DNA of 64,000 nt from Ascidiella aspersa (lineage: Eukaryota). Shown one piece after another: positions 1-50,766 of the stretch. Both the position numbers and the translations under genes were made by a program. Each line of letters opens with the position of its first letter. The stretch's first letter is position 1. The notes below the pieces were generated by a model, which was not told the DNA's origin, did no database searches, and was given only the letters and a program-made list of their open reading frames with translations. Location of the stretch: NCBI GenBank assembly GCA_963924565.1, contig OZ004615.1:16368001-16432000 (forward strand). The letters are read 5' to 3'.

Positions 1-527
1 ATTTTCTTTAATTCTATTTTTACATTTTTATTTCGATTTACTTTATATTTACGCCTTTTTCAATTGTTGTTCAGACTGTGCATAACTATAAAAGGCTTCA
101 CTTTTTGTTAAGCGTTCAATGTATCCTTTAAAATGTAGTCTGCCCAAGTCCTATATTTTATTATGTGGTAGAAATAACTCAATTAAATAGCAAGGTAATG
201 AAATCATACAATTAAACAGCGTTTTTTTAAAAGTGTGCATCTTGGCTTTTTGCCAAACAAGTATGATGTTCCTGTTAAATACCAAGTCAATTTTTTGCAA
301 CTTACTATTTGGTTACCGAATTATATAGTTATTGGAAGTAATCCCCAGTTTGGTCAGTTTTATTGTTCGAGTTATTCTTATTAGTTTTTAGCGAAATTTA
401 CTGGCTTTCCTTATATAAGTAATTTTGCGTATACAATGCGAAACCAGTGCACCTAAATAATTTACCAAGACAGATGTTGAATTTTATATTTTGTGTAATA
501 TAACGTGTAATCGTGCTTACTTTTCAG

Positions 528-680
528 AACCCGGCCGATTCGAGTTCAGCAAGTCCTCGTTCGTGTTCAAGACAAGCGGGGAAGTTGGAATGGTTCCTGT
601 GATTAGATCGGACGGAACTGACGGCGAAGTTTTCCTCAGTTGGCTCATCGAATCAGTCGGCGCCCCTTCGCCATTTGAGG
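528..680 (+). CDS. Exon 1 in window, Calx-beta N-half ([14 protein letters not shown]...)
   Basis: ttttcag acceptor, gtacgt donor, phase 1-1. Confidence 0.88.
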
Positions 681-3600
681 GTACGTGGATTAATATTCCT
701 GTTGACAGGCATCTGAGAGATTACATTAATGTGTTAATATTGTCTTTAATTTATTGGACGAGGAAGTCTGCCAAGTAACTTATAAATACCAAACCTAATG
801 ATTTAACTTGGTTGCGCTAGTATGAAAAGCTGCTCGGTCAATGTGTTCAAAATATAGTCACTTATTTATGCAACTTTTGCCACAAGTTTATTGTTTTTAC
901 TTGCGCCTCTGAAAAAAAAACAGTATTTAATACAAAAAGAGACAGAAAATTTGATTAAAAAAAATCACCGGGTACGACTAAAACGATAAAAGAAGTATGC
1001 TATTATAGACTGTACTGCGAGGAACTTGTTGTAAGAAACAGTGTTAAAATATTGTCTCTAATGGTTTAGTGACGTACATATTCCTATCTTCTAGGAGCCG
1101 AAGGTTTCCTTAACTTCCAGGACGGCCAGGTGAGCGCCAACATCGAGATCGGACTTGAGGGTGTCCCCTCCGACGAGTTCATGCTTGTTCTCCTTCCATC
1201 TAAGGACGGAGCAGTGCTTGGGGCAGCCACACGCGCCAGGGTCACAATCATTGGAGAGAAAGGTAGGGAAATGGATGTTTTTTTGTTTTTTTTTTAATAA
1301 CGGTGAATTTCTGTATGTCTGAGACGATTTCAAGCGGATTGTGGTATATTGCTGTTTTATATTAGTGAATGGATCAGGTAAATTATAAACGTCTAAATTA
1401 ATGGGGGTATATATCGCTAAACACCTATTAGGGTTTCATTCAACCATTTTGCATTCAGCTTTCTGAAAACCAGTATAAAACACGTGTTTTCTTTATATTT
1501 GACCGCCAAATACCACTACAGATCAAATGAAAGCAGATGCAACGGTTCCAAAATAAATTTACTTTACAGTATACTTTGTATTATGTTGTATATTTTGGGA
1601 GCCTTAGTTTTGCTCAACCAAGTATCTTCAGAAAATTTAAGATTTTAGATTCTCGTAACAATTCATAGCCAACACTATAACAGGATTGTGTTCTTCAAAA
1701 CCCCTATTTTTTTCCTTGTGAGTTATATTTTAATGTACGATGTAACAAGTAATAAAGCTAATTCGCCACTATTCAACAGTTGTAGACTTATTTCAGACAT
1801 AATACTATCTTTATATAAACTGTTGCTACCAGGCATAGTAATACACATAAAAAACAGCTCCTCTTGTATATTGAAACGTTGGTGAAGAATTAAAATTACC
1901 AGAGGAGCTGTTTTTTGTATAATACCATCTTCACTCACCGCTCTTACTTTTTTCCACAGAGGAGCCCACAATCGAGATGGGAGAGCCGACGATGAGTTTG
2001 CACGATCCGGAGGTGGTCGAGGTCAAGGTGATGAGGATCGGTAACGTGGAGGAGGCAACTTACGTCGGATGGAAAACGGAGGACGACACTGCCGCCAACG
2101 GGAAGCACTTCATCGGAGGAGCAGGTGGGATTTAGAATGTTGGGCTTAAAGCAATAACTTGGTATGCAGTTAATCCCGGATTATAAGCTGATTATATTCG
2201 TACTAAAAGATGAAGGAAATGTTTGTTTTGACGAATTATTATCAGCTCGGTGGCAAAGTTAAGTTACAATTAGCATATATAATTCCATTAAACAAATGGT
2301 GACAGACTCATCTCGTTATATATAGCTAAACAGTTTTTCTTTTGTTTGCTATATGTTTTTGGTTTACGATTATATGTATTTAGTATTTATCTTAAGGACT
2401 GTCACTGTAACCATATTTTATTTGCTTGGTTTTCATGTTCTACCCAGAGTTGGATCAATTGTAATTGTAACTTTTGTTATTAATTACGGTTTTTAATGCT
2501 ATTGTAATTGTAATGTAATTGAGGCATTTTCATTCTGTGTAATTCTAATTGTAATTTTCTACAATTTGGTTCAATTGATATTAGGAAAATTTAAGTTTCA
2601 ATAATGTTCCACGTTGTTTATTTTGTTTAGGAAGCCATGAAACATAAACTGATTTCCATATTTTGGCAGCAATAAAAACTTAGATCAATTGTAATTGTAA
2701 TTAATGTACAATTAATTACAGTTTTTAATGTAGTTGTAATGTAATTGAAGCACCTATGTAATTGTAATTGCAATGGAACTGAATTAATGTAATTGATCCA
2801 ACTCTGGTTCTACCCCTGTTAATCTTCCTCGTCTTTCTCCAGGCAATCTCGTCTTTGATCCTGACGAAACGGAGAAGAGCATCCTCATCCCGATCCTTGC
2901 ATCTCCCAACGACGCGCCCGGAGTCTTCGTGGTGCGACTCGTTGACGTCAGAGGCGTGGGAAAGCTTGGTGACGATGCGGCCGCGACGGAAGTAACGTTG
3001 CAGCCTGTTCCGAGTGAGTGAACACTGTTGTTTGTTGTTAAACGAGGCTAAGTTCAGGTTTTACTTTGATGTGTTTTTTTAGTTACACGAATTTAGATTA
3101 TTTTGTTACAAATGTTGTTGTTTTTGCGATGTGAAGCCTGCAACGGAATGATGCCAACTTCGACAATTAATTTAATCTGTTATTCTCTAGATTTCCAGAA
3201 ATGTCAATGTATTCTAATGAAAGGTGAAAAGAGGTTTAAAAGAGTTTTTTTTTAATTTATTTAGGGCGATCTATTAGGTTGGATTTAGTAAGCACCACCT
3301 GGAGACTAGTGTTTTTCGTAAAACTTTAAGTTTCTACTTTTAAATATTTCCTACATTCTGTCCTGATGTACATACAAATTTGATCTCTAAGTAGGTTAAA
3401 CGACTATATTTAAGATTTTCTTCGACTATTGTTTGTAATGATAAAGCATCAAGTGCAAGAAATTAAATTGTTTGTAGTTAGAAAATTGTAAAGTGTGTCG
3501 ATTTAATCGTTTACATTTATGCCTTTTTCTAAAATCTTTAACGTTAAAACTACACAGGAATCGAAAGAGTACAATTACAAGAATCCGCACCCACAGGTAT

Positions 3601-6600
3601 TAAACATATCGGTGCCTAATCAAATAACCAACATCCACGCTTTCAAGCATATAATTTGTTCAATTTCCATCGAAACACTGTTAAAAATGCTTTAATTCAA
3701 CCATCCTCACTTATTTTTGCAAACTGATATTACGTTTGAATCTATATTATATTTTCTCAAATAAGCTCATAGCATGAAAAATTGAGATTTTTAAGTATTA
3801 AATTTTAAGGCGGGTGGAAACCGCATGGCTATTTTTGTACTGGCTGACTTGCTGAAACATTCTGATTGTAAAGCTTGTGATACATATACACTATACGTGT
3901 TACATTTATAACTTTGATTATAGCATGCACGTGCGAAAAGAATGTGACTTTAATATGTAACTAATTTGTGGATTACTATCGCGTGTGGTAGGATTAAGCA
4001 TTAAATCTTCAGACTCAAGACTCTACTGCATGACGATTGTGATTTGTTGTTTGCATGTCGCGCGTGGTGGCCAACTTGCATTGCAATGTATACTCATTAA
4101 TCGCCAGCTGATAAAGTAATCAATACAATGAAAAGTGATATGACTGCTTGTTACGAAAATATATAATTGTACATTCAGTTATTTTCGCCTAATTACAAAA
4201 ACGTCTCCTTGTAAGGCCATGTTATGGTCGATAAAGTAATCAATAATGAGAAGTAATATTACTGCTTATTACAAAAATAAGAAATTGTACATTCAGTTAT
4301 TTTCGCCTAATTAAAAAACTTCTCATGTGTAAGGCATAAAATAACTCCCGTGTAAGGCATAAAATCGAACTAGTTATGGCAATTTGTTGCTTAACTGTAA
4401 CCTTACGCCTAAAACACCGTTTTCGCGCTTTATATTTTTCGTCATCTAATTTTCGGAACACTTTTTCCAGAAATGGTGGTTGAATTCCTGCGAAAGCGAT
4501 ACCTCTTCCGCCAGTCGCAGGGATCGGCCTTCGTCCCAGTTAGACGATCCAATGCCTACGGGATGCTGGCTCTTCGCTGGAGGACTCAGCCAATCACGGG
4601 AGCCGACGACTCCCAGCTGGCATCCTGGACCTCCGAGAAGAGGGAGAGGAAGAACTCATCCTCTTCGGTCGACTCTTCGCCCGAAAGAGGACAGAAGCAG
4701 GCGGAGGAAGTTGCGGCCTACGACGACAGCCTGATCGACTGGGGATCCGGTAAGTTGCAATTTTGTCGGGGTGTTTAATTTTCTGCAATGACTAAGTACA
4801 AATATGTTTTGTAAATGGCTGAATCTGTCTAATTCTAAATAGAGGAATAAGGAGCCATCTTATTCCTCTAAGTAAAAATAGTGTTTCGGATTGTTTTGTT
4901 TTATAAAAATATAAAGAGATGGAAGATTTGTAAGGTCGTAGCCAAAATAGGTTGATCATACGACGAAGTAAGGGATGTCGTTTAGTTAATGTAAATAACA
5001 ATACGTCTTCCTTTAACTATGAAAGTTGTCCAACAATTGTTATTTAACCTGAGTAAATTACTCAAAACCTAATTTTAGAACTGTTACTATTTTAAGCAAA
5101 TCGATCGACAAAAAACATTTTGTTAAGTACAAAGCGCGCCATAAACGTTCCGAGAGAATGTAAATGTTAATATGCCACGTTTTTTAACTGTTCATATGAA
5201 CACAGGAACGATCACGTTCGACGACGGCGATCACGAGGCGAGCATCGAGGTGATCGTGTGCCGTGATATGGCTCACCGTGAGTCCAACTTCCGAGTTGAG
5301 CTGGTCGATCCGTATGACCGCGTCACCTTCGCTGTTCCGACCACGATGGTGACCGTGATCAGAGACAAAGGTGAGATGTTTTTCGTGATGCTTTATTCGT
5401 TGATCTAAAGTCTAAACAGGATTGTGATGTAATGTTGCCGTAAGATAACTGTGTGGAATACGTCTGTTAAGTTACTGGAAAGAATATTCTTAGCGCTAAA
5501 CCAGAGTTTGGAACTCATTTTCATTCATAACCATCCATGTCTATTCAAATAACTATGTGTAATTGTGTATTCACACAAGTTGGTTGTAAGTAGCATATCA
5601 TTAGAGGAAAATCTATAATCTGAATAGCAAAACCTTTTTTAATGATCCTTGCCTAACTAACTAGCAATGAAGTACATCTACTCTGTCCACATGGGTTTTT
5701 TAAATATTACAGCATTTACCCTTCTCAGCGACAGTTAAGGTATACTTCTTAAGAAAACCTTGCCGCCATTGCGGTAGCCCTTCGTTAGGTTATCCTCAAG
5801 GGTCCATGGGTCGCAGATAAGACGCCCTGGTTTAAACTGACTTCAAATTTTTATATAAAATAGGGGCAGAAGACTAATCAAATCTGTTTACACATGCGAG
5901 AACACGCATTGATAAAACACGCGTAATTACTTATTCCACAAATGGGTTTTTATTCTCGGCTGGCTAGGTCAGCAGTTTTTACAAAGATATTTTCTTCTTT
6001 GCTCAGACCCCGGCATGCTGGGCTTCGCGAGCCCCAAGTACAACTTCATGTGCAGCGAGAAGCAACTTGTGATCCCGGTCCATCGCAGCTCCGGCGCAGA
6101 CGGAACGGTCGCCGTGCCTTGGTACACCAGGGACGCAACCGCTGTTGGTAAGACGCAGATTTACTGAGCTTGGGGTTTCTTTAAAGTTAGACGGTATCAC
6201 TATAAAAATGTTTATTTAAAAAAATTAGAAAATATTTGGTATTTTAGCAAAGTTTGCAATATCGGTAAAATCTTTTAGTTTTAAACGCTGATCTGACAAA
6301 CGCCATGAAACGTTGTTTGTATCTTTTTCGAAATGTTGAGCGACACGGTGCACTGATGCAGTCGACTCGAGTTAAATTCATATATATTTATATCTTTATT
6401 TTTAGATATTTGTTTAAATATATAGACGTGTCTGATTTTGACTTACTAACTACTGACCAAGAAAGCGGTCTTAACAAGATTAGTCTTGTTTCAAGTATCG
6501 GTAGAATATAAAAAAAACTCTTTGGAAAAGGTAAATCTAAACGAAAATCATCCTTAGTGTTTTACGAAAATTGTACGACCGGCGACCATATTCTTTGCAA

Positions 6601-9600
6601 CATATCTTGCTCAGCAAAATCGAAAAGAAAAAACAAAACGTGTGCACTGTTAATAACGTAAAGCGAAAACTGAGCGACCGTTTGGTGTAGGTGGAGTGCA
6701 CTACTTGCCGGCCGACGGTAACCTGGTCTTTGGCGACGGCGATGTGCTCCGCAAAATCACAATCCCGATGCCAAAGAGGGTCGACTACTTTGACGAGGAC
6801 GAAGTCGCATTCAAGCTCTGTCTAGGCGAGCCGACCGGCGGAGCGTCGCTCAACGTATACGAGGCACACGTCATACTGCAAAACGACATAGGCGAGTGGA
6901 TATTTTATACGTTTTCATAGTCGCAAGTTCTGGTTTTCATTCTGGAGGTTTTTCGGTCGTTTAATGACGATTTGTATGCAAACACAGAGTTGCTAAAAAC
7001 GTTAGGTTACGATGGAAGAGGAACCAACCTCCTTTACCAGTGTTTCTCAACCCTTTTTTTGCGGCGAATAAAATTCCTATTATTTTTGTCAGAGAACAAA
7101 GCATAAGACAGTGACATAAACAAGGTGGAATTTATTAATTAATTAATTAATTATTGTGAGCCAGGACGTGACAAAATCATGGTCATTACGGATCTTACTG
7201 ATCTTAGTCTACCACTTTAAATCTGCTGCAATCGGCGACCCAATTGTTTTTCTTTTTTTTTGGCGACCCAATTTTTGGTTTTTTTTTCGACCCAGGTTGA
7301 AAAACACTGGAAGTCATTATCTTTAGGCAGTGCCACTTCGGAAGTGGCTAATGTAAATTTCAAGTATACACATTTGTAAGTCAGGTCAAGTTGTATGTAT
7401 ATCAGGTTAAGTCATACAACGCTCACAGAATATTACCTAAACGTATAGTGATATTTTCGTAGTAATTCGTTTGATAATTTTTTTACAACTATTATCAAGC
7501 GTTGCGCATTTCTTCAACAGTTCCCGCCAAGATCTCATTCGCCGAGCCCAGCATCACGTGCTGCCAGTCAAGTGGAACGCTCCAGGTTCCGGTTCACCGC
7601 GACCAGGACGCCTCGGGTCTGGCCACCCTGGCCTGGCAGGTCCGGGGACTCCCCGGCAAGCCTAAGTCTCGCTACGAGGGCGCCACCGGAACCTTGGTGT
7701 TTGCTGACGGCGAGCCATCCAAAGGTTTGTAAAGATGTCTGTTTTTAAGTGGCACAAGCACGCTACTAAGCAACTTAAATTGCACAAAAAATCACGGCAA
7801 CTGTCACAGGTTGTTCCTGTGTAGAAGGCTCGAAATCTAAAATCTTATATTTCATAAATTTAAGATAATTAAAACCGTTGTTTTGCTATTTAGATTTGAA
7901 TTCCCTATATTGCTAATTTAAACGCACCAAAAACATAATTTAAACGCACCAATAAAAAGCAGTTTTTTCTCCTTAAATATATTTTTTTTATTTTGGCGCA
8001 GACATCTCGATCAAGTTGCCGCCCCAAGTGCAACAATACACAATGGACGCCTTCCAGATAATCCTGGAGCAGCCTACAAGCGGACGAGCTACGCTGGGAG
8101 ACCACCAGCAGTGCAACGTGTCCGTCGATAACGACATAAGTAAGTTTGCTTTGCGTTTAATTTGTAACAATCCTTTTCTGCTATTTGTTTAAAAGTGATA
8201 CATGTATCGTTAACCAGGGTACACTAGAATGCACGGTTATGTAATCAAGCTTGATAATGAATTGCAAAACCGAAAAGATCGAGTAGATCGACATCATCTT
8301 GATTATGAGCTTGTATCATATTCAGTTAAAATGCATTGTTAACCATCTTACAATAAACTAGGTGTACCGGTTGATAGAAGCTTTTGAAATGCAATTGGTT
8401 AACGTTAGTGACCATAGCCCATACTAGTCTGACGTGCTAAGGGTAGTTTTCTAAACAAACTGAAAAACCAAAATTGTTTTTTTTATATTCCACTTTGTGC
8501 AACACATGCATGGCGATTTCTTATTCCGTGGCTTTCCACAAAGCAGCGACCCTTAAACCTTTAAAATCGGACATTATCACATTGTTGTATTTCAGTTCCC
8601 GGACGTTTCAACCTGGAGCGGGAGAGCTACGACTTTAAACAGAGCCAAGGCCGTGACGTCATTCGCGTGGTGAGGAACGGAGGTGCAAAAGGAGCCGTGT
8701 CGCTTCCCTGGAGGGTAAGTCGACTTCAATGTTGGTTTCACGGCGAGGTTACACATAGGTGGTTATTTCATGCTATATCCTGTACACGTGTAAGGGCAGT
8801 TTATTTAATCCCCTAATTCCGGATTTGCCACTAACCTTTATCCTCGTCAAACTTTATTTGCACATTTTTAAATATTCCAGTAATTTTTTCGTCTGTAGTC
8901 TTGCCAACAACGGATTGTAGCAGTTAAAAGATGCTATAGTTTATAAATATGTATTTTGAATAGCAACTTTGCGCTGTTAAAGTTTGATACATAAGGGCAT
9001 CAATTTTATTTTTTTTAATTGCTTTAAATTAAATCTCCCTGTGTTTTTGATTTTGTTAGAGCACATTAACTTGTAAATAAACTTTAAAGGTTCTACCCGC
9101 CCTTGACACATCACCGCCCTCATCCATGCATGACCTTCACGGTTCAGTGGAGTTCGATGACGGACAAACAAGCGCTGACGTCATCATCAACTTTCCACCA
9201 GATACTGACGAAGACGAGGAAAGGTAGTTTTTCTCCTACGCCGTTCCGTCGCGAATATTATTCATAAATGTATTCTAAGGCATACCGTAATGGTATCGTT
9301 ACAATGAGTTACATCAAAAAAGTTTGACAAGATATCCTAGATTTTTAAACTCGGAGTTGTTCAGTTTTATTATTACAGGTTTTTTTAATTCCGAGTTCTT
9401 TAGTAATCATATTAAATCCAGGAGTGATTTCTGAAATTCCAGCCAACAGTCCAATATTGCTCACCCATCCTTCTTTTTTCAGCTTCGTGTTCATTCTGCT
9501 GCCGCCAGATGGCAGAGCGGAGCTCGAGGAGCCATACAGGGCAAATATGACCTTGGACAATGATCTGCGAAGCGAGGTGACCTTCACCAAGCCAGAATAC

Positions 9601-27600: not shown

Positions 27601-30600
27601 TTTTATTTTCAGCCGAAAGAGGAATCATTTCGATTTTACCGAGGAAGCAAAGTATTAAATGGCCATTTAAAGATGACCGAGTGGTTTTTAAAATCGTCCG
27701 GGAAAATGGAACGTATGGACCCGTTCACCTACAATGGACCTTAGGGGCAAAACCGATTGAAACCTCATCACAATCCACCAGTAGCAGTTCCAGTAGAAGT
27801 TCGTCAAGTAGCGATAAAGAAGAAGCCATATTGGAGGGAATCTTTCGGCGCACCTACGGGGACATTAAAATCCCGAATCAAGAATCCGGCACCGAATTTT
27901 CTATATTCACCAATCCCGAAGTCGGTCTTGACGATGACGTCAGAGCGACGATCAAGGTCATTCCGATGACCCACGGAGTCATAATGAAGGAGGGGTCAAG
28001 TGCTGCGAACGTCAACTTCAAAGTGGAAAGAGGGCGGGTGTCTGTCCAACCAGTGCAGCCTGAAACTACTTGGCCTCCTAAAGATGGCCATCTCATCTTT
28101 GATGTACAGAGGGATCTTGGAACGTACGGTCCCGCTTATTTACAATGGAGTGTTGACCGTGCATCGGAGGGTTGCGATGAAGATTTGTTTGAAAACCTTT
28201 TTCCGCGTAAAGAAGGCGACATTCGAATCGCAAACCGGGAATCGAAAACAACGTTTGGAATTCCAATATCGAAAGATGACTACGGACCTCCAGACGATAC
28301 TGATTTTAGACTTCACATAACTCCTGTTACAAGAGATTTGACTTTGTCTGATGATTCTCATGAAGTTTTATTCACCATCAAAAAACGTTTGCCGCCAGGT
28401 GAGCTGGGATTCGCAAAACAGACCTTCGTATATAAAACCCACGAAACAACTGCGGTTATTCCAATTGTAAGGGAAAACGGTTCAGGCGGAGAAGTTTCCG
28501 TCGAGTATTTCGTAAGGGGCGACACTGCGTTAGTGGGTGAACATTACACCGAATCCTGTTCACAGGGAGTGGTTTTGTTTGAGGATGGACAAACCGAAGG
28601 AAAAATAACTTTGGACTTGGTTCCAGAAGCACGATACAGAAACCCGGTCAAGCTTCTGATCGAACTCGGAGCCACAACTGGTTTTGCTGAAATCGGTTTG
28701 TACGAAACCGAAGTAACTCTCCTACCAACTTACGTCGAACCTCCTGGCGTTTTGGAACTGGATGATGGTTCTGATCTTGAAGCTTGTGTTAAAAATAACA
28801 GTGTTATTGAAATTCCAATTAAGAGGAAGGAAGGTGTACAGGGTACGGTGTCGGTGGTTTGCTCAACTGTTGATGATTCAGCAGTTGCTGGAACTCATTT
28901 TAAGCCTTTGCAAGAAAAGGTTGTATTCGAAGATGGAGAGACAGAAAAGAAAATAGACATTGAATTAGTGCAATCCAAGTATCGTAAGAAGCTGGAGTTT
29001 TCTGTTCTATTATCTCAAGAGGAAGGTGGGGCAACTTTATCTCCTGTGTTTCAGAAACGCATTGTGCTACTTCCAACGTATACAGAACCACCTGGAACGT
29101 TTGCTCTTCCAGATGTAGACAGCTCTGCTCTTCAAGTCAGCGCCCTTCATGACAAAACATTTCCATTGACAATTAAGCGAACTGGCGGAGTTGGCGGAGA
29201 CGTATCAGTACATTATTTTACAGAAGACGGAACTGCAATTGCTGGGGAGCATTTTAAACAAAAAAGTGGCATCTTGGTGGTAAGCGACGGAGAAACGGAA
29301 CAAACTGATGCAGTTGAACTCATCCCTTGTCAGTACAGAGAACCAAAGTATTTCTACGTTAACTTCGACGATCCAAAAGGTGGTGCTGAGTTGAAGGATT
29401 CGCAAATGAAAGTGATGCTATTGCCAACCGATAAAGAACCCGCTGGAATTCTCGGCTTACCTGATGAGGAATCCCTCTCTGCAAACGCACTTGAAGACGA
29501 CACTATTGTTATACCTATTGTAAGAACAAAAGGCGTTGGAGGAGAAGTGAGTGTCAACATTAAAACGTCTGATGGCAGTGCCAAAGACGGCGTCCATTAC
29601 ACAGGAATTGACAAGACCATAACTCTAAGCGACCGCGAAGACTTATTGCAGCTTCCGATTGAGTTGCACCAACCTCTGTACAGCGATCCAGTTGACTTTA
29701 TTGTGGAAATTAGCGAACCATCAGGTGGTGCTAAATTAGCTGACAACAAGATGGTGAAAGTTGTTCTTCATCCAACAGAAAGAGGAACCATTTCGATAAC
29801 ACCTAAGAAACAGAGCGTAAAGTGGCCTTGCAAAGATGATCAGATTGTCGTGGAAGTTCTACGAGAAAATGGAACATACGGACCCGTTGATATCAAGTGG
29901 ACGTTGGATGAAAAGGCAAGAAAATACCCTTTAAATTCAAGCAGCAGTAGTTCCAGTAGTAGCAGCTCATCATCAAGCAGTGAAAATGACGATGGTAACC
30001 TTAAAACGTTTTTTACTCAAACTAATGGTGACAAGACAATTCCTGACAACGAATCAAGTGTCAGCATCAACATTCCGACTAATCACGACGCGGAACTTTC
30101 TGAAGACCTCAGAGTAACCCTCAACATTTATTCTATCACCAAAGGCGTCACCATGAAAAAACATGGAAAGTCTTCAAGAATTGATCTTAAGGCCGAAAGA
30201 GGTAAAGTGACCATCGAACCCACTTCCCCAAACATTACGTGGCCTCCTACAGACGGCGACGTTACATTTAAGGTACAGAGAAACCTGGGAACGTATGGCC
30301 CTGCTCATCTACACTGGAATGTTGACTGTGACTCAGAAAGCTGTGCAGAGGAACTTATCAATAGTATCTTTACCCAGAAAGAAGGGGATATCCATATCGC
30401 AAATGGAGAATCTAAGACCACGTTTAACATTCCTGTTTTAAAAGATGACTACGGACCTCCAGATGATACAGATTTTCGACTTCACATAACTCCTGTTACA
30501 AGAGATTTGACTTTGTCTGATGATTCCCAAGATGTTGATTTTACCATCAAAAAGCGATTTCCGCCAGGTGAGCTGGGATTCGCAAAGCAGACTTTCGAAT

Positions 30601-33600
30601 GTAAAACCCAGGACGAAGCCACTGTAGTGATTCCAGTTATAAGGGAAAACGGTTCAGGCGGAGAAGTTTCCGTCGAGTATTTTTTAAGGGACGACACTGC
30701 ATCAGTGGGTGAACATTACACCGAATCCTGTTCACGAGGAGTTGTTTTGTTTGAGGATGGACAAACCGAAGGACAAATCACTTTGGACTTGGTTCCAGCA
30801 GCAAGATACAGAAACCCGGTCAAGCTTTTGATCGAACTCGGAGCCACAACTGGTTTTGCTGAAATCGGTTTGTACGAAACCGAAGTAACTCTCCTACCAA
30901 CTTACGTCGAACCTGCTGGCGTTTTGGAACTGGATGATGGTTCTGATCTTGAATTTTGCGTTAACGATAACAATGTTTTGGAAATTCCAATCAAGAGGAA
31001 GGAAGGTGTACAGGGTACGGTGTCAGTGGTTTGTTCAACTGTTGATGATTCAGCAGTTTCTGGAACTCATTTTAAGCCTTTGCAAGAAAAGGTTGTATTC
31101 GAAGATGGAGAGACAGAAAAGAAAATAGACATTGAACTACTCCAATCCAAATATCGCAAGGAGCTGGAGTTTTCGGTTGTTCTATCGCAAGAAGAAGGTG
31201 GGGCAACGTTATCTCCGGTGTTTCAGAAACGCATTGTGCTCCTCCCAACGTACATAGAACCACCTGGAACGTTCGCTCTTCCAGATGTGGACAGCTCTGC
31301 TCTTCAAGTCAGCGCCCTCCATGACAAAACGTTTCCATTGACGATTAAGCGAACTGGCGGGGTTGGAGGAGACGTATCAGTACATTACTGTACGGAAGAC
31401 GGAACTGCAATTGCTGGGGAGCATTTTAAACGAAAAAGTGGCATCTTGGTGGTAAGCGACGGGGAAATGGAACAAACTGATGCAGTTGAACTTATTTCAT
31501 GTCAGTACAGAGAACCAAAGTATTTCTACGTTAATTTCGACGATCCTAAAGGTGGTGCGAAGTTAAGGGATTCGCAAATGAAAGTTATGCTCTTGCCAAC
31601 TGATAAAGAACCGGCTGGAATACTAAGCTTACCTGAAAAGGGTACACTATCTGGAAACGCCTTAGAAGACGAAAGTGTTGAAATACCAATCACTCGCACT
31701 AAAGGTGTTGGGGGAAAAGTCACTGTAAATGTTAAAACGACTGATGGCAAGGCAAAAGACGGCGTACATTACGAGGGAGTAGACGGGCAAGTTACATTGG
31801 CAGATCGGGAAAACTGTGTAAAGCTGCCAATCACCCTCCTTTGTCCTCTCTACCGCGATCCAGTGGACTTTACGGTGGAAATCAGCGATCCATCAGGAGG
31901 CGCACTACTCGCCGATAAAAACAGTCAATTGACGGTCGTTCTTACACCAACAGACACCGAACCTCAAGGCATGATAACGTTCGACGAGGGCGAAACTGGT
32001 GAAATCGCTGCCGATGCTAACGCCAGCAGTGAGGTCTCTGTTCCTGTTAAACGTATCGATGGTTGTGGCGGAGACATAGTGGCAATGTACAAGACAATTG
32101 AAGGGACAGCTACAGCCGGGAAACACTACGAACCAGTGAAAGGCTTGCTCACCATGAAAGATCGCGAGGAGAAAGCCACAATTGAAGTTCCTATACTCCT
32201 TGACCAACACCGCGACCAACTCGTGTTTAAATTGGCACTATTTGGCGATCCTGAAGACCCGGATAAAATGCAAACCAGCAAGATCGTTCTCGTTCCCACT
32301 GACCTTGAACCGACCGGTCGCATTGTATTACCTAGCAAGTTGGAGGCCAATGCCAATAACTCCAGCGTTATGAACGTGCCTATAAGTCGTGTGGACGGAG
32401 TAGGCGGTGAAGTGTCGGTCCATATCCGCACAAGTGACATTACAGCGCTGGAAAATGTCCACTATAAGCCCATCGACCGAACGGTAACGCTTGGAGACCG
32501 ACAGAGCGAAGTACAGATTCCGGTCGAATTACTTCCAGCCGTGTACCGAAGTGATCTGGAATTTTGCGTCGAAATATCGCAACCTTCCAACGGCACTGAG
32601 TTCAGCGAGTGCAATAAGACCACAGTCACGCTCGCGCCAACCGATACTGAGCCAGAAGGAAGGGTTGTGTTTAAATCTGATGACGATAATGAGGGCGCAA
32701 TATCGCGAAACGCAAATGACGCAAGTGAAGTCGTAATTGAAGTACGGAGAGTGGAAGGTTCGGGCGGCACAAAACAGGTGCAATTTCGCACAATAGACGG
32801 TACCGCCAAGGACGGCGAGCATTACGAGGGTCAAGCAGGGACCCTAGAATTAAAGGATCGAGAAGAAAGCGCCGCGCTTTCGATTCCGCTCGTGCACGCC
32901 TCGTACCGCGACGATTTGGAGTTCGAGGTGGCAATTTTGGACGCGGGCGCTCAAGAAAGGCACCTCACAGTCAAGCTTGAAGCGACGGACACCGAACCGG
33001 CGGGCGAGCTAGTTTTGCCTAAAGAAATCCAAGTACAAGCTAACATGGAGGACAGCAACACATTTGAACTGCCTATCAAAAGAGTCGGCGGAAAGGGCGG
33101 AGACGTCTCAGTGGCCATCAGCACTACGGACGGCACAGCCATCGACGGTGTTCACTACAAGGCCATTGACGGACGGGTGACGCTTAAGGACAGACAAGTG
33201 GACACTAAGCTATCCATCACCCTGCTCCCGGGAACGTACCGCGAGATGCTACAGTTCTTCATCGAGCTAAAGGACCCCGTTGGCGGATTTGTTCCAGCCA
33301 CTCACGCCAGGTGCAAAGTTGTGCTGCTTCCCACTGACAAGGAGCCTTCGGGTTACCTGGCTTTTGCCAAATCTGAGGAAGTTCCAGAAGTGCGCGCGAA
33401 CGCCCTGGAGCACGAACGCATTGAGGTCCCTGTGAGGCGCTTCGCTGGCCTCGGCGGCACCGCAACCGCGCGCTACAGGACTGTCGATGGAACAGCAAAG
33501 TCCTGGGAGCATTTCGAGCCGAGCCAGGGAACAATCGCGTTGGGCGACCGAGAAATTTCCGAAGAAATATCTATAACTCTATTGCCGGCCAGCTACCGAA

Positions 33601-36600
33601 AAGAGCTGCAGTTCCACTTGGAAATCGCAAACGACGACGACGGTGCGGATGATTGCAATGATGCGTCGTCGAAAATGCTGATCAAGTTGGATCCAACCGA
33701 CACTGAACCACCAGGAGAGGTAACATTGCCTGACGACGACGAGCTTGAAGTGAGTGCCTTAAGCTGCAACAGCCTTGGAATACCAATCAGACGCAAGAAG
33801 GGCCTGGGCGGGGAGGTCTCAGTGCGGGTTCGAACCCGCGACGGAACGGCCAAGGACGGGCTGCATTACACCGGCATCGACCAGCGAATCGTGCTCGACG
33901 ACCGCCAGGAGTTTTCGGAGGTTGTGGTGCCCCTGTTGTCGCTTCTATATCGCGACAGACTCAGTCTGGTTGTCGAGATTCTCGAGCCGGAAGGCGGCGT
34001 GACGTTGGGTGATGTGCAACACTCGTCGGTTACATTTCTACCGACCGATGACGAACCCACAGGTCAGTTGACGCTATGCGGCGATATGGACGGCGACGTC
34101 GTCGACGTGGACGCCACAACTACCAACATGGCCGTTGTGCCGGTTCGGCGCACTGGTGGAATGGGCGGGGGGGTATCCCTGCCTTATCGGACTAGGGACG
34201 GAACCGCCAAGAGCGGTACACATTACAAGGCAACCGATGGTGTTCTGACGTTAGGCGATCGCGAAACCGAAGGGAAGATATCGATTCCGCTTATCCCAGC
34301 CACGTACCGCGACCAACTTGAGTTCTACCTAGACACAGACGACGACAGCGGCGCCCAAGCTTGCGTATCCGTGCTTCTGCGGCCCACGGATAACAGTCCA
34401 AGGGGCGATCCCGCCTTCACGACAACAGACGGCGAGATAACTGTGGACCCCAAGAAAGTAGACCTCGTCGAAATACCCCTGAGCCGAGTTGGCGGTTTCG
34501 GCGGAGAACTCGACGTGACCGCGATTACTTGCGACGGCAGCGCCCTGGCCGACGTGCACTACAAGCCCCTGTACTCGGTCGTTACCTTTCCGGACGAAGA
34601 GACCGAATCTTCGATTTCTGTGCAACTGTTGGACGCCCAATACGACCAACCTTTGTGCTTCGAGGTGCACATAAACGGCGCCGACGAGCCTTCCGAGAAA
34701 CTGAAGAAGCTCAAAGTCAACCTGCTACCGACCGTGGTCGAGCCCCCGGGGCGTGTGATCGTCGATGCTTCATCGCCCGATGAAGGACTGAGGTTGGACA
34801 CCGAAGGACTTGACACGATATTTGTTCCGCTGACACGCGTAGAAGGGAGTGGCGGGGAAACACACGTCGATTACGAGACTAAGGATGGCAGCGCAAAGGC
34901 AGGTCAGCATTACGACCCCGTTCGGGGACGGGCAACGTTCGGTGACGGACAGGTCGAAACTGCAATCGACATCCCGCTCATATCTTGCTCGCGAACAGAG
35001 CCTCTTGATTTCACCATTGCTCTGCGCGGCGAAGACAACGATAACAATGACGGCGGTTATGAAGAGACGCGCGTCGTTCTGCTGCCCAACACTGAGCCCG
35101 AGAGCCACGACGTCGACGTTGACGCTACCTGCGTCGAAGCGTGCGTCTTGGACGACGGCGTCGCGCGCGTAACTGTGCGTCGCGGTGACGCAAAGTGCGC
35201 CAATGCCATCCCGATTTCGTACAAGACGAAGAACGGCAACGCCAAGGCAAGGAAGCATTATCAGGCGACGAGCGGGCGCGTCCAGATCCCATCGGGCGGC
35301 GATCAATGTTGCATCGAAATCCCGCTTAACAAACTCGACTACCGGCGCCCTGCCAACTTCTTTGTGCAGGTTAAGACGCAAACCAAAGTAGTGCGCGTTG
35401 TCGAGGTTGTTCTTCGTCCCACTGTGGAAGACCCGCCCGGCTTTCTCGAGTTCACGGCCCCTACTTTCGCGCACCCAGCTTTCACAAGCGACAGCGGCAA
35501 GCCGACCCTTTTGCTGCCGGTTGAGCGTACCGAGGGCACGGGCGGCGAGGTGTGCGTCGACTACTTCACACGCGACAACACAGCAATCAACGGGCAGCAT
35601 TACGAGGAAGCGAGCGGCGCGCTGACGTTCGGCGACGGCGAGTCACGCAAGGAGCTTGCCATCGAGCTGCTGCCATTCGACAACTACACGAAGGACGTGT
35701 CGTTCGTGGTCGAACTGGGGCTAGCGACCGGCGGCGCCGAGGTGGAAGGAAACTACGAGACGGAGGTGACTCTCCTGGCGCCGCTTGACGAAAACGACCC
35801 AGGTGTGCTTGGGTTCGAGTCGCAACGCACAGTTGTGTCCTCAACGCGGCTGCAGCGTGAATCAGACCGACCGGTTACAATCCAGATCCCAGTGAGGCGC
35901 ACACTCGGTTGTGGCGGCGACGTGAGTGTCGACTACTTCACGCGAGACAACACAGCCGTCGCCGGGCTCCATTACGCCGAGACTGAGGGCGAGCTTGCCT
36001 TTGCTGGTGGCGATGCCCGGCAACACATCGAGGTCGATTTGCTGCCAGGTGCGCACTTCGCCAAGCAGTGCTCTTTCACCGCGGAGCTGGGTGGTACGAC
36101 CGGAGACGCCGAAGTGGGACTCTACGAGACCGAGGTCGTACTGAACGCGCTTAAAAGGCGAGATTCGTCGAGCAGCTCCAGCAGTTCTTCGTCTTCCAGC
36201 TCCTCCGGTTCATCCGACAGTTCCTCGAACTCATCGGACGACGAGGGCGTTTTCAGGAAAAGTTCCCGATCAAAGCGGGTCCTTACCAAGACCAGCCAGA
36301 GGTCGGTGAAAGTGCTTCAGATGGAAGAGAGAACGACCACCACGACTTTTCAGACTATCGAGACCTTGGAAACCCAGTCGGCCTCGAGATCGGTCGTCGT
36401 ACAGCAACAAGAGCTCGACTTGGGTAAGATTAACAACATTGTCTGTTAAATGACCTTTATTTTGGTGGGGAACGAACGCTCGACAATGTACCTTTTCAAT
36501 TGCCTCTCTTCTTATTTGAATATGCCATTTAAGTTGCGGGACTTCACGTCAGCTTTTTTAAAATATTCCTTTTAAATCTAACTATCACAATCGGATGTAT

Positions 36601-39600
36601 AGAGAACGAAAAACCAGTAACCTATGTTGAAGTACGGCATTAAACAAAAATGATCCTCCTTAAAATATTACGCAGAACTGTAAAAATATATGGATAATTG
36701 TTTCAAAACGTTGCTACAATGCGCCCTACAACTGTAAAAGAGTTCAATATAAACTAATTTCTTCACGTTGTAAATCATGACTAACACAAACTTCGCAAGA
36801 CTATACAAGAAAATTGTGCATTCCTGAAATATTCAAATAACAAGGCCTTGTAATTGCCGATGAAATAAGTTATTTGAATTGCTAAATCATGGCTATCAGA
36901 AAATGGCAAGAAACAAATACCCAATCCCGACGTTTTTCGTGTGGGGCCTTTTAAATTGACCGGGGAATGAGGTATTTAAATTGCTGGGGTCGACTTTTAT
37001 AATAAAAGCGTTCGACTTTTATAATAAAAGCGTTCGCTTTTCCCGCAGGCGACGACACAGGAGGAGAAATCGGTTTCCCAGAGGAACAGCAGTCGGTTCG
37101 CGCCGGAGTGGACCGCGAGGCAGCCGTCACGGTCGCGCGCTCTTACGGGTTCAAGGGTCAGGTCACGGTCGACTGGTTTACGCGCGAAAACACGGCGGTC
37201 GAGGGCGTCGACTTCGTGCAGTGCGAGGGCCAGGTGACCTTCGCCCAAGGTCAAAAGATAGCCACTGTACACGTGCCGTTACTCGACGGAAGAGGAAATC
37301 GTGAGAGGGGCAGTTCATCCGAGAGGAGTTTTATCGTCGAAATGGGTGAACCAGATGGCGACGCCACCATGGGTCGGTATGAGACCAACGTGGTAGTGGT
37401 GGATCCTGATACGTCACAGTCCCCGCGGAAAGGTTTGCATATTTAAGCTTTTTGACAGGATACGTTGCACTGGTTACCAAGATTTAAAGTATATCGCCGA
37501 AACTTTGCCATTACGAATCGTTTTAGGTAGTGTTTGTGTTGCACAAGTGTGAATATAGTCCATAAATTAGAGTAACAATAAATACGCTGTAGCACAGGTC
37601 CTCTAAAACGATAAATACATTTTTTGTATACTTTTCTGTCTTTTATCCGCGGACACAACTGTGTCATAAAATACTATTTGGTGCTTGATTTATGTTTGGT
37701 ATTTGGTCTAAATTTACCACCTATAGGCTTTGGTGTCAGCGTTTATTTTATTCTTTCGTTAACATCGATTTTGTTTCGCAGGCAAACATCGAACCTTCGG
37801 CGGCAGAAAAACATGATTACCTGCTCGCCCTTTTTCACTAATTTTCAATATATATTTCTTACACTAACTCGAAATGTTCCTTAAATAGCTTACTAATCAA
37901 TATTCTTTTGTAGGATGTTTCTATATGAACTTTGTAATCTGTTCTCTACTTATATTTTCTTGCTTGCTTTACTAAGCATCTTTTCTTACAGCCTGTCCCC
38001 AGAAAGTCAACTTTATTTGAATACTTTGTCTAACTTTGAATGTAAAAAAAACTAACAGTTATATCGTCAGGGTAAACCTGGCTAAAAATCGGCATGTGAT
38101 GCCGTAACTCTAACTTGTTTGTCGTTTGTAACGCAAAGTTATTTAACATTCCGGGCTGCTTACAACAGACAAGTGACGTGACTTTACATATAACACTTGA
38201 CTGACGTGTATTGTTGCTCGCTCTTTCTGTTAACGACTCACACAAAATTCACGGCAAAAACACATTCTGAATCCCTGACTGGTGGTTGTCCCTGTTTCTC
38301 GATGGTGAGGTCTCTTCTACAATCTTGTTCCCGCTGTCGACTGGTATTTGTTGACTTATGTTTGTTTCAATTTATTATCGTCCGATAATATCTCGAAAAA
38401 TGGGTGTCTTGTATCTGTGTCTGGCATTGTCTTTTTACCGAGTCGGAAGCATTGTGGGTTAAATTTTCCAAGTTTTAAAGATCCATTGTTCTGGGTAAAA
38501 TGATACAAACGATTAAACATGTAAATATAAATTTAAACAGCTTTGAAGACATATCTTAGGACAATGTAGAAATCTTAAACACGTCTTTGACTATTTCAGC
38601 TCGCTTGGTGGCGCCCAAGAACGTGTCGGTTGACGTCACAGGAGCGACAAGCTTTAAGGTCAATTGGGAGCCGCAGGAAGCAACAGTTCACGAGTACTTG
38701 GTAGGTTAACGTTAGGGGTTTTGCAGTTACAAACGTTTTTTGCAGTAATAAAATCGAGTTCAAAATATGTTTTGCGTCATAACAGGACTACAACTAACGG
38801 TGTTTTTAAATTCATTGCTAATTCCGACAGCAAGTTACTGAGGATTCATATCTTAAAGCGTTTAGTGATTTTTAAACAGTTGGTGACATAGTTTGCTATT
38901 TAAATAGAAAACGTAATAACTCTTAATAAGAATATCAAAGCCCATACAGAAGTAGGTATCATTTTGAACGTTTCGAATAACTCTTATTATTGCAAAATTG
39001 TAATAAATTATCTTATTAAAATGTTTTAAATCGTGTTATACAAATAGGTCTGGTGCCAGTAAAAAGTACAAGCCGGCGTTCAAATGTTCATCAAACATGT
39101 CGCTGACAGTTCTTTCGCCCAAAATCGGAAACTATATAGAGCAGTCAGTTCAGTGAAATGGTACACACAACTAATAGGATGTATTCCGCATAAAAACGTT
39201 TCTATTTGCAAGCGTACATCAAATCCGTAACACTGTGTAGCCGATGACAAACTGAATGTGTAAAATATGAAGATATCTCCTCGCCCTTACACGTAAATGA
39301 CGACAATGGCTTCAAATGGGAGCAAATATTTTTTAGGCTTTCCCGTCAAAGTCAGTCATTAATAAGTTCTAGTCTTTTAAAGAATCATTCTATTTGAATA
39401 AGAGACTGATGATGCCTTATTTTGGGGCGAAATATATTTCTCTTTCAAAGGACTAGAACTTATTAATGACTGACTTTGACTAAGACCAAAGGAAAGTCTA
39501 AAAAAATTCACTGTGTAACCGCGTCGCTAATCGTTGCACAGGTTTCGTACAAACGAGCTGGAGACGCCGATGAACCTCACCGCTACACAGTGCCACCTAG

Positions 39601-50653: not shown

Positions 50654-50766
50654 TTACACGTAAAACTCAACGCAGCCGTTTTCCTCGCACGATTTTGCGG
50701 CACCGCACTCAGTTCTGTAGTCGACGCTCTCCGGGTGTGATGTGTGCTGGCCGCTGTAGCAATGAC
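50654..50766 (-). CDS. Antisense gene, terminal coding exon (GHCYSGQHTSHPESVDYRTECGAAKSCEENGCVEFYV*)
   Basis: ttgttcttgacag acceptor, phase 1, TAA at 50656-50654; continues the Cys/His pattern. Confidence 0.82.

What the first reader, a model, noticed from the sequence alone, without database searches (positions are those of the whole stretch)
528..37432. At least ~41 Calx-beta repeats in one polypeptide with cytoplasmic-looking inserts
Seen: 16 repeats across small exons, 24 in the giant exon and 1 after it, with two lone FN3 domains (20674-21363, 23419-24141) between them; the gene is still open at the 5' end. Established: large Calx-beta arrays are known from extracellular proteins (ADGRV1/VLGR1 with 35; FRAS1/FREM; sponge aggregation factor), while beta-4 has just one. 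Here the loops carry poly-Ser/acidic inserts, Cys residues are scattered with no obvious pairing pattern, and no TM segment is visible. Inference: possibly an intracellular, titin-like or Ca2+-sensitive spacer rod.
Basis: partly seen in the sequence, partly recalled or inferred. Interest (0 to 1): 0.78.

Follow-up and report, generated by a model that had tools for sequence, protein, structure and literature searches.

The report
Sea-squirt integrin with giant inner tail
This is a sea squirt's version of the cell-anchoring receptor integrin beta-4, and the part of it that lies inside the cell appears to have grown to about 7,000 amino acids built from some 49 copies of one small folded unit, where the human protein is usually described as having one.

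Summary
The window has 41 Calx-beta(-like) units on the + strand: 16 over small exons, 24 in one 8,811-nt exon and 1 after it.

Eight more Calx-beta units lie upstream of the window. Before them come a single strong transmembrane exon and a complete integrin beta ectodomain. Downstream come an FN3 pair whose second domain best matches beta-4 FnIII-2, then tail exons to a stop at 47635-47637.

Styela clava and Ciona intestinalis RefSeq models (4,606 and 4,045 aa) carry the same fused architecture and are collinear with the locus. They are named "uncharacterized" and "GPR98-like". Ewan et al. 2005 called the Ciona gene the beta-4 orthologue but could not resolve its tail.

The array is therefore most likely the cytoplasmic tail of a tunicate integrin beta-4 (about 49 Calx-beta units, about 7,800 aa). 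It is not an ADGRV1/FREM-type ectodomain.

Transcript proof in this species is missing: the one RNA lay was too thin. No paper describing the array was found in 7 searches.

The parts
527..20246 (+). Calx-beta units 9-21 of the array, each split into an N-half and a C-half exon (two of them into three exons). Units 1-8, the TM exon and the integrin ectodomain exons lie upstream of the window, at window coordinates -28591 to -92 (C9:16339410-16367909).
   Evidence: Own repeat HMM, with complementary profile halves on the + strand only. tblastn collinearity with the Ciona and Styela proteins.
20694..21350 (+). FN3-A, in two exons (20694-20822 and 21243-21350).
   Evidence: Pfam fn3 profile positions 5-47 and 48-83.
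21740..22948 (+). Degenerate Calx-beta unit with a Ser-rich/acidic insert, in two exons (21740-21943 and 22694-22948).
   Evidence: tblastn to Ciona residues 3369-3509. hhalign of the Ciona+Styela counterpart against the Calx alignment gives 83.8%, E 7.9e-6, over 105 columns. Pfam finds nothing on the two exons taken alone.
23457..24125 (+). FN3-B, in two exons.
   Evidence: Pfam fn3 profile positions 11-39 and 41-82.
24971..26577 (+). Two Calx-beta units. One is split (24971-25087 and 25744-25899) and has an acidic Ser/Asp insert. The other lies in a single exon (26278-26577).
   Evidence: Own HMM E 1.3e-4 and 4.1e-3 for the two halves, and 3.8e-11 for the single-exon unit. tblastn to Ciona residues 3603-3839.
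27613..36423 (+). Giant exon of 8,811 nt (2,937 codons), phase 1 at both ends. It is built as two copies of a super-repeat (2 divergent + 4 canonical Calx-beta units) followed by 12 canonical units, giving 24 units, and ends in a Ser-rich charged stretch.
   Evidence: ORF. Pfam finds 20 stretches. hhalign supports the 4 divergent units. The super-repeat copies are 86.8% identical at nucleotide level, with dN/dS 0.24. Splice sites TTTTATTTTCAG| and TGG|GTAAGA. AlphaFold2 of one tandem pair gives pLDDT 88.5, all beta.
37063..37401 (+). Last Calx-beta unit, immediately before the FN3 pair, as in vertebrate beta-4.
   Evidence: Own HMM E 5.5e-25. PDB matches: NCX1 CBD12 at 2.1e-7 and the integrin beta-4 Calx-beta domain at 1.9e-5 over its full length.
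38611..41021 (+). FN3 pair: FN3-C (38611-38703 and 39542-39703) and FN3-D (40157-40279 and 40890-41021).
   Evidence: Pfam fn3 halves. The best single-domain PDB match of the FN3-D N-half is beta-4 FnIII-2 (1qg3, 42 bits in one stretch), against 22.7 bits for each of the two stretches on beta-4 FnIII-3,4. The top matches of the C-half are integrin beta-4 chains.
41437..47637 (+). Tail exons (41437-41649, 42550-42753, 44512-44790, 47503-47634) and the stop codon at 47635-47637.
   Evidence: tblastn to Styela residues 4458-4519. By eye, the sequence agrees with the Styela C-terminus. Splice sites are poor for 41649 to 42550, so an exon may be missing there.

Best explanation
The Calx-beta array is the cytoplasmic tail of the tunicate orthologue of integrin beta-4 (Ci_beta5 in Ewan et al. 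2005).

One gene of at least 76 kb appears to encode, in order:
- a Ser-rich N-terminus, then PSI, beta-I (VWA) with a DxSxS MIDAS motif, I-EGF repeats and a beta-tail domain;
- one transmembrane helix and a short membrane-proximal segment;
- 21 Calx-beta units;
- FN3, a degenerate Calx-beta, FN3;
- 2 Calx-beta units;
- a giant exon with 24 units;
- 1 Calx-beta unit;
- an FN3 pair whose second domain resembles beta-4 FnIII-2;
- a Gln/Ser/Thr-rich tail.

That is roughly 7,800 residues, of which about 7,000 are cytoplasmic.

Shown here: the domains, their order and strand, the single TM, collinearity with fused gene models in two other ascidians, purifying selection on duplicated repeats, and loss of most canonical Ca2+ ligands.

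Inferred: the ectodomain binds basement membrane with an alpha subunit. The tail acts as a long, largely Ca2+-independent chain of beta-sandwiches. That chain holds the distal Calx-FN3-FN3 module, the part that in vertebrates binds plectin, far from the membrane. Its length could be of the order of 200 nm if extended, using a per-domain size that I recall and did not compute. The length seems to be tuned by exon and intra-exon duplication: at least 23 units by the same HMM in Ciona and in Styela, against about 49 here. Ser/acidic loop inserts are candidate phosphorylation sites.
For: Ectodomain:
- Integrin_beta matches lie at C9:16343116-16345455 on the + strand, best E 3.7e-31.
- Exon-by-exon Pfam finds PSI_integrin, Integrin_beta profile positions 2-214 across four exons, I-EGF_1, EGF_integrin, EGF_2 and Integrin_B_tail.
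- The motif DVSYS is visible in the exon at -24938.

Transmembrane exon:
- It lies at -15335 to -15141 with a 19-residue Kyte-Doolittle mean of 3.39. Every later supported segment scores 1.38 or less.
- Its donor is CTA|GTGAGT, with an in-frame TAA just inside the intron. The next exon, 677 nt on, is already Calx-like.

Related gene models:
- Styela XP_077973499.1 (4,606 aa) and Ciona XP_018671881.1 (4,045 aa) contain Integrin_beta, PSI, I-EGF, 16 and 14 Pfam Calx-beta stretches, and fn3 in one polypeptide.
- Both align collinearly to the locus. Residue numbers run straight from the TM exon into the Calx exons: Ciona 743-807, 808-852, 836-873, 876-932, 933-983.
- Ewan et al. 2005 placed Ci_beta5 with vertebrate beta-4 and reported unexplained Calx-type ORFs 3' of it (passages read).

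Distal module:
- Calx, then FN3, then FN3, with PDB best matches among integrin beta-4 chains.

Coding constraint:
- 3,007-codon ORF.
- dN/dS 0.24 between the super-repeat copies.
- A tandem pair folds with pLDDT 88.5 and pTM 0.65 as two beta-sandwiches.

No sign of an adhesion GPCR:
- None of the 150 listed 7tm_2 matches lies within 2.8 Mb of the gene.
- ADGRV1 is reported absent from Ciona.
Against: - No transcript evidence in this species. The single RNA lay sampled about 6% of one run. It put a few reads on the beta-tail and TM exons (depth 0.5-2.5), none on the first Calx exons, and reported no splice joints. That is compatible with low expression, but also with a short isoform.
- The relatives' gene models are automatic predictions. 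UniProt/Ensembl split the Ciona gene into a 751-aa 'Integrin beta' and Calx fragments.
- The signal-peptide exon is only a candidate, at -35140 to -35041.
- Orthology of the ectodomain to beta-4 was not tested here. The beta-I exon matches beta-1, -2, -3, -6, -7 and -8 about equally, and no beta-4 ectodomain appears among the 60 PDB sequences matched.
- The FN3 arrangement differs from vertebrate beta-4.
- My splice model is crude: 18 of 78 introns have poor consensus scores.
- The rod or spacer function has no direct evidence.
Confidence: 0.78

Rival explanations
1. There are two transcription units. A conventional short-tailed integrin beta ends just after the TM exon, by read-through into the TAA inside the intron. 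A separate, soluble cytoplasmic Calx-beta/FN3 giant starts downstream. On this reading the RefSeq fusions in Ciona and Styela are prediction artefacts.
For: RNA reads were seen on the beta-tail and TM exons but not on the first Calx exons. UniProt/Ensembl hold a 751-aa 'Integrin beta' and separate Calx fragments for Ciona. Reading through the donor would give a roughly 39-residue tail.
Against: The TM exon has a strong GTGAGT donor, and only 677 nt separate it from the next coding exon. The junction sequence (…PLLP.…GA.S.IEFIK.KY…) is conserved in Ciona and Styela. All RefSeq isoforms listed for the two species (9 of 9 full-length models) join the two parts. The first Calx exon has no convincing start with a signal peptide. 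RNA depth was too low to count absence. Even if this rival were true, the array would still be intracellular.
Confidence: 0.1
2. It is an extracellular Calx-beta array of the ADGRV1, FRAS/FREM or aggregation-factor kind.
For: These proteins carry large Calx-beta arrays (passages). RefSeq calls the Ciona protein 'GPR98-like'.
Against: The single TM precedes the array and follows an integrin ectodomain. No 7tm_2 match lies near the gene. Pfam on the giant exon and on the Ciona and Styela proteins shows no GPS, EPTP, LamG, CSPG, VWD or NCX membrane domains. ADGRV1 is reported absent from Ciona.
Confidence: 0.02
3. The array is chiefly a cytoplasmic Ca2+ sensor or buffer, like the CBD1/CBD2 domains of Na+/Ca2+ exchangers, rather than a structural spacer.
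For: The fold is that of CBD domains. Twelve of 46 E-F loops keep an acidic cluster, mostly in the small-exon units. The protein is acidic: the giant exon has 488 D+E against 298 K+R.
Against: The 'DY' Asp is kept in 4 of 40 units. Fifteen of the 20 canonical giant-exon repeats have Tyr/His-Arg/Lys in place of the acidic loop. The title of Alonso-Garcia et al. 2009, seen only in reference lists, speaks of cation-independent stability for the beta-4 Calx-beta domain. The mapping of ligands onto NCX1 residue numbers is my recollection.
Confidence: 0.1
4. The full array is rarely made. The phase-symmetric giant exon, and perhaps other exons, are usually skipped, so the common protein is about the size of the Ciona and Styela models.
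For: The giant exon is 8,811 nt, a multiple of 3, with phase 1 at both ends. Forty-four of 78 introns are phase 1. Styela and Ciona have several isoforms that differ by up to about 430 aa.
Against: A 3,007-codon open frame, together with dN/dS 0.24 between its internal duplicates, shows the exon is translated and under selection. A related 2,225-aa open product with 16 units exists in another assembly.
Confidence: 0.25

Closest known systems
Vertebrate integrin beta-4 (ITGB4), the hemidesmosome receptor subunit
   Same: Integrin beta ectodomain, a single TM and an unusually long cytoplasmic tail built from Calx-beta and FN3 domains. The order Calx then FN3 then FN3 holds at the distal end. FN3-D best matches beta-4 FnIII-2. 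The Ciona counterpart grouped with beta-4 in Ewan et al. 2005.
   Different: About 49 Calx-beta units instead of one, and a tail of about 7,000 residues instead of about 1,000 (the vertebrate figure is from the passage). The other two FN3 domains are not a second pair after a connecting segment. They lie in the middle of the array and flank a degenerate Calx-beta.
Ciona intestinalis XP_018671880-2 and XP_026695066 ('G-protein coupled receptor 98-like') and Styela clava LOC120348632 ('uncharacterized protein')
   Same: Same fused architecture, with exon-level collinearity. Exon identity reaches 65-83% at the best-conserved ectodomain and TM exons and about 23-24% in the repeats.
   Different: They are 3,838-4,613 aa long, with at least 23 units each by my HMM. 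The stretch that matches the giant exon here holds about 3-4 units in Styela. The Ciona models stop inside the divergent units. The names given to them do not recognise an integrin.
ADGRV1/VLGR1
   Same: A very large tandem Calx-beta array in one animal protein.
   Different: In ADGRV1 the array is extracellular and ends in GAIN/7TM. Here there is no 7TM, and the array follows the TM of an integrin. The count here exceeds the 35 usually quoted, a number I recall rather than took from a call.
Titin, obscurin and filamin-type cytoplasmic rods
   Same: It works like them in principle: long intracellular chains of small beta-sandwich domains, with disordered inserts rich in possible phosphorylation sites.
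   Different: Those rods use Ig/FN3 domains, and titin and obscurin are not tethered to a membrane. There is no homology beyond the four FN3 domains.
CBD1-CBD2 of Na+/Ca2+ exchangers
   Same: Cytoplasmic Calx-beta fold. This is the best PDB sequence match of the last unit.
   Different: Most units here lack the acidic ligands, and there is no exchanger membrane domain.

Membership tests
Integrin beta subunit | PSI, beta-I (VWA) with a DxSxS MIDAS motif, I-EGF repeats and a beta-tail domain, in that order | tested here: met
   Pfam exon by exon, the genome search, and DVSYS in the exon at -24938.
Integrin beta subunit | A single TM helix after the beta-tail, followed by a membrane-proximal W-x6-[HI]D-R-[RE]-E-like segment | tested here: met
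   19-residue Kyte-Doolittle mean 3.39. The sequence ...LLCCWRCCVYVIDREEAKNY... is visible. The canonical motif it is compared with is recalled.
Integrin beta subunit | N-terminal signal peptide | tested here: inconclusive
   Exon 2 starts at an acceptor and has no Met. One candidate exon 1 lies at -35140 to -35041. No RNA confirms it.
Integrin beta-4 | Long cytoplasmic tail containing Calx-beta followed by an FnIII pair | tested here: met
   Units at 37063-37401, 38611-39703 and 40157-41021. PDB best matches are beta-4 chains.
Integrin beta-4 | Connecting segment, then a second FnIII pair (FnIII-3,4) and a C-tail | tested here: not met
   No FN3 was found after 41021 on the tail exons that were examined. 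The other two FN3 domains lie upstream at 20694-24125 and are not adjacent to each other.
Integrin beta-4 | Ectodomain groups with vertebrate beta-4 in a phylogeny | not tested
   Taken from Ewan et al. 2005 for Ciona Ci_beta5. No vertebrate beta sequences were at hand. The PDB search of the beta-I exon does not discriminate.
Integrin beta-4 | Plectin-binding residues of FnIII-2, and pairing with a laminin-binding alpha subunit | not tested
   The first-reader note s1-801806 claims the arginines are conserved. I did not check this.
ADGRV1 (adhesion GPCR V) | GAIN/GPS plus a 7TM C-terminal to the Calx-beta array | tested here: not met
   None of the 150 listed 7tm_2 matches lies within 2.8 Mb (11 further matches were not listed). 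The gene ends at 47637 in a Gln/Thr-rich tail.
FRAS/FREM | CSPG repeats and an extracellular signal-peptide topology | tested here: not met
   Pfam shows no such domains on the giant exon or on the Ciona and Styela proteins. The array is cytoplasmic to the TM.
Ca2+-binding Calx-beta (CBD1/CBD2 type) | Acidic ligands: the Asp of 'DY', an acidic E-F loop, and C-terminal Asp residues | tested here: not met
   Asp in 4 of 40 units, acidic loop in 12 of 46, and Tyr/His-Arg/Lys in 16 of 46. Not met for most units, though a minority of the small-exon units keep acidic loops.

The most novel reading that the evidence does not exclude
Tunicate integrin beta-4 carries the longest cytoplasmic domain of any known adhesion receptor. 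It is a chain of about 49 Calx-beta domains in which a conserved Tyr-Arg replaces the Ca2+ site, so the chain stays stiff without calcium. Its length is set by exon duplication, from about 25 units in Ciona and Styela to about 49 here. On this reading, a hemidesmosome-like anchor in sea squirts holds its plakin-binding FN3 module some 0.2 micrometres below the membrane. The lone Calx-beta of vertebrate beta-4 would then be the remnant of an array already present in the common ancestor of tunicates and vertebrates.
Probability: 0.3. Interest if true: 0.8.

Novelty: new variant of a known kind. Interest (0 to 1): 0.66.

Why it matters
Integrin beta-4 is the textbook exception among integrins because of its roughly 1,000-residue tail. 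The role of that tail's single Calx-beta domain is, as far as I recall, still unclear.

A sister-group orthologue with a tail about seven times longer, made almost wholly of that domain, would change how the vertebrate domain is read. It could be a relic or a minimal spacer. It would also give a natural length series (Ciona, Styela, this species) for testing how far a cytoskeletal docking site must sit from the membrane.

The finding also settles a point that Ewan et al. 2005 left open, and corrects database names: 'GPR98-like' in Ciona and 'uncharacterized' in Styela. It shows that a large Calx-beta array is not by itself a mark of an extracellular protein.

Tried and rejected
RNA support. 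One RNA-seq run of the same species label (X3) was laid on the TM exon through the first Calx exons (L015:3901-9900). About 6% of the run was read. Depth was 0.5-2.5 on the beta-tail and TM exons and zero on the Calx exons. The only joints came from interspersed repeats. This is inconclusive, and the tool's single call is spent.

Ectodomain orthology by PDB. The beta-I exon matches beta-1, -2, -3, -6, -7 and -8 at E 1e-20 to 1e-23, with no beta-4 ectodomain among the 60 sequences matched. That does not discriminate.

FN3-C has only generic FN3 matches.

Start codon. Exon 2 has no Met. A scan of 16 kb upstream for Met + hydrophobic core + phase-1 donor gave one candidate, which remains unverified.

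Splice model. My scoring is home-made. All 78 introns allow a compatible GT-AG pair, but that is weak evidence because such pairs are common. Eighteen of the 78 introns score poorly, and one (41649 to 42550) scores very poorly. The figure of about 7,850 aa is therefore rough.

ADGRV1/FREM reading: rejected.

Literature. Seven searches found no description of a multi-Calx tail in a tunicate integrin. Only Ewan et al. 2005 comes near, with 'short ORFs ... data not shown'. I read passages only in PMC1145181, PMC4030831, PMC11670116, PMC13729602, PMC5400394, PMC8584163 and PMC4237329. Alonso-Garcia et al. 2009 was seen only as a reference. No supplements were opened, and they might hold gene lists that name this gene.

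The costly representative search was not used, so I make no claim about absence outside tunicates. One search shows only that, among proteins of 2,533-8,060 aa, the word search found Styela and Ciona alone.

All searches were made exon by exon or with natural proteins from the database.

Full report
What is in the window. The + strand holds an open frame of 3,007 codons at 27426-36449. Pfam finds Calx-beta in its translation with E 5.8e-197 and 20 separate stretches. I split this exon into repeats, built an HMM from them, and searched all six frames of the window plus 60 kb fetched upstream. I then rebuilt the HMM with repeats from related proteins.

Hits lie only on the + strand. The three minus-strand hits in 124 kb have E of 0.46 or worse. 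Outside the giant exon the hits come as alternating N-halves and C-halves of the domain in successive small exons.

Counting units. There are 21 split units from window coordinate -14457 to 20246. Eight of them lie upstream of the window. Two are weak: the N-half of unit 1 has E 0.0035, and both halves of unit 6 have E 0.39 and 0.075. Two more units lie at 24971-26577, 24 sit in the giant exon, and one is at 37063-37401.

Four of the 24 giant-exon units are divergent and invisible to Pfam. Profile-profile comparison with the canonical repeats gives 94.1% (type A) and 72% (type B). Ciona has counterparts of them. The 'linker' between the two FN3 domains is a further degenerate unit (83.8%).

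Both lone FN3 domains are confirmed as complementary half-profile matches.

What the gene is. An earlier first-reader note on this window (s1-801582) pointed to an integrin beta-4-like tail after 37049, so I searched the genome for the integrin beta domain. Four matches lie 22-25 kb upstream of the window on the same strand, the best at E 3.7e-31.

Exon-by-exon Pfam then gave PSI_integrin, Integrin_beta (profile 2-214 over four exons), I-EGF_1, EGF_integrin, EGF_2 and Integrin_B_tail. An exon follows whose 19-residue hydropathy peak is 3.39. No later supported segment exceeds 1.38.

That TM exon ends in a GTGAGT donor with a stop codon just inside the intron. The next exon, 677 nt away, is already Calx-like. 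The array therefore lies on the cytoplasmic side of a type I receptor.

Relatives. A word search with part of the giant exon returned a Styela clava protein (4,606 aa, 'uncharacterized protein LOC120348632') and a Ciona intestinalis protein (4,045 aa, 'G-protein coupled receptor 98-like'). Both contain Integrin_beta, PSI, I-EGF, many Calx-beta and fn3.

Both align to the locus exon after exon in the same order. Residue numbering runs unbroken from the TM exon into the Calx exons. A second search, with the Styela beta-tail/TM/first-Calx region among proteins of 2,533-8,060 aa, found only these two species.

UniProt holds the Ciona gene in pieces: a 751-aa 'Integrin beta' and a Calx fragment. 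Ewan et al. 2005 identified Ci_beta5 as the beta-4 orthologue. They wrote that they could not determine whether it has the long tail, and noted only short Calx-type ORFs within 10 kb downstream, data not shown (passages). Wittlake et al. 2021 report ADGRV1 absent from Ciona (passage), so the RefSeq name is a misnomer.

In this genome, none of the 150 listed 7tm_2 matches is within 2.8 Mb of the gene.

The distal end. After the last Calx-beta come two FN3 domains, each split in two exons. For the N-half of the second one, the best single-domain PDB match is beta-4 FnIII-2 (42 bits in one stretch), against 22.7 bits for each of the two stretches on FnIII-3 and FnIII-4. For its C-half, the top matches are beta-4 chains. 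The last Calx-beta matches NCX1 CBD12 and, over its full length, the beta-4 Calx-beta domain.

Tail exons continue to a stop at 47635-47637 and resemble the Styela C-terminus.

The order differs from vertebrate beta-4. The other two FN3 domains sit in the middle of the array, on either side of a degenerate Calx-beta.

Size and structure of the gene. I fixed frames by the homology-supported segments (79 of them) and chose GT-AG pairs with a simple home-made score. Every one of the 78 introns allows a compatible pair, 60 with a fair consensus. Forty-four introns are phase 1. The exons sum to about 23.5 kb, or about 7,850 codons from exon 2. This is a rough figure.

The giant exon is 8,811 nt with phase 1 at both ends, which agrees with note s1-802006. 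It contains a duplicated super-repeat of 2 divergent + 4 canonical units. The copies are 86.8% identical over 1.5 kb. Over 462 codons they give dS 0.39 and dN/dS 0.24, so both copies have been kept by selection.

The Styela stretch that matches this exon holds about 3-4 units, so most of the 24 arose after the split from the Styela line. An unnamed 2,225-aa product with 16 units, 32% identical, exists elsewhere. Its origin could not be looked up.

Ca2+ ligands. I aligned all units to the HMM and used the alignment of the last unit to NCX1 CBD2 to locate the E-F loop. Results:
- The Asp of the 'DY' motif is present in 4 of the 40 units that cover that column. It is His in 29.
- The loop is acidic (at least 3 D/E, including an adjacent pair) in 12 of 46 units. 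These are mostly small-exon units and the divergent type B.
- 16 of 46 units have Tyr/Phe/His followed by Arg/Lys there. That includes 15 of the 20 canonical giant-exon repeats.

In 21 giant-exon rows, Arg27, His51 and Tyr79 are kept in 21, 20 and 18 rows. Which NCX1 residues these columns correspond to is my recollection. Most of the array is therefore unlikely to bind Ca2+ in the exchanger manner.

An AlphaFold2 model of one tandem pair, using the 18 paralogous pairs as its alignment, gives two all-beta domains with mean pLDDT 88.5 and pTM 0.65. I could not compare it with solved folds.

Expression. One RNA-seq run under the same species label was laid on 6 kb from the beta-tail exon to the third Calx unit. 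A few reads, all in the orientation expected for a + strand RNA in a usual stranded library, fell on the beta-tail and TM exons. None fell on the Calx exons, and no splice joint was reported. With about 6% of the run read and depths near 1, this neither supports nor refutes the fused transcript. It is the main gap.

How it most likely works. Shown: a membrane-anchored integrin beta chain with one TM and an enormous cytoplasmic chain of beta-sandwich domains that ends in a beta-4-like Calx-FN3-FN3 module.

Inferred:
- The ectodomain, with an alpha partner, binds basement membrane.
- The distal module docks a plakin or intermediate-filament linker, as in hemidesmosomes.
- The Calx chain acts as a spacer or tether whose length evolves by duplication.
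- Ser/acidic loop inserts (27615-28025, 29778-30194, 24938-25150, 21707-22993, 36156-36423) are disordered sites, possibly for regulation by phosphorylation.

I put 0.78 on the architecture and topology, and much less (about 0.4) on the spacer mechanism.

Rivals are two separate genes (0.1), an extracellular array (0.02), a Ca2+ sensor or buffer (0.1), and frequent skipping of the giant exon (0.25). The last would not contradict the main reading.

Novelty. The kind of protein (integrin beta-4) is known. The fused models already sit in RefSeq under wrong or empty names, and a 2005 paper hinted at Calx ORFs. Seven full-text searches found no description of a multi-Calx cytoplasmic tail in any integrin.

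I class it as a new variant of a known kind. It would surprise integrin and hemidesmosome specialists, and it can be tested with standard cDNA and imaging work.

Noticed in passing
window 28000-36000: GC content climbs inside the giant exon from 0.44 (28-32 kb) to 0.54-0.59 (32-36 kb), against about 0.40 in the flanks. The 276-aa antisense ORF at 34770-35600 is probably a by-product of this GC-rich coding stretch.
   Followed up: no
upstream of window, C9:16339257-16339480 (window -28744 to -28520): Ectodomain exon 2 encodes a run of about 30 Ser-rich residues just before the PSI domain. It is conserved in the Ciona and Styela N-termini and may be a mucin-like O-glycosylated cap on an integrin.
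   Followed up: partly
window 23974-23985: The palindrome TGACGTCA sits directly at the predicted acceptor of the exon that starts at 23986. Earlier notes on this genome (s1-790905, s1-790894) report this word crowding coding exons.
   Followed up: no
L015:4901-5100, 6101-6500, 7901-9100 (introns of the gene upstream of the window): Very high word depth in a DNA run (up to about 228,000) and RNA reads on both strands mark interspersed repeats inside the introns. Many variable 'joints' around 8660-8993 suggest a family with an internal deletion or variable region.
   Followed up: no
genome G000: C1:7844581-7916385, C1:24459465-24488288, C2:36071350-36078535, C8:8124779-8132722: There are other Calx-beta loci in this genome. 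They may be the Na+/Ca2+ exchanger and FREM-type genes. They were not examined.
   Followed up: no
genome G000: C5:17.42 Mb, C1:17.83 Mb, C1:18.24 Mb, C8:11.31 Mb: There are four further integrin beta loci, making five with this one. That is the same number as reported for Ciona.
   Followed up: no
window 50654-54202, minus strand: A 524-aa ORF on the opposite strand downstream of the gene (52613-54187). A first-reader note (s1-802335) covers it. It is not part of this gene.
   Followed up: no
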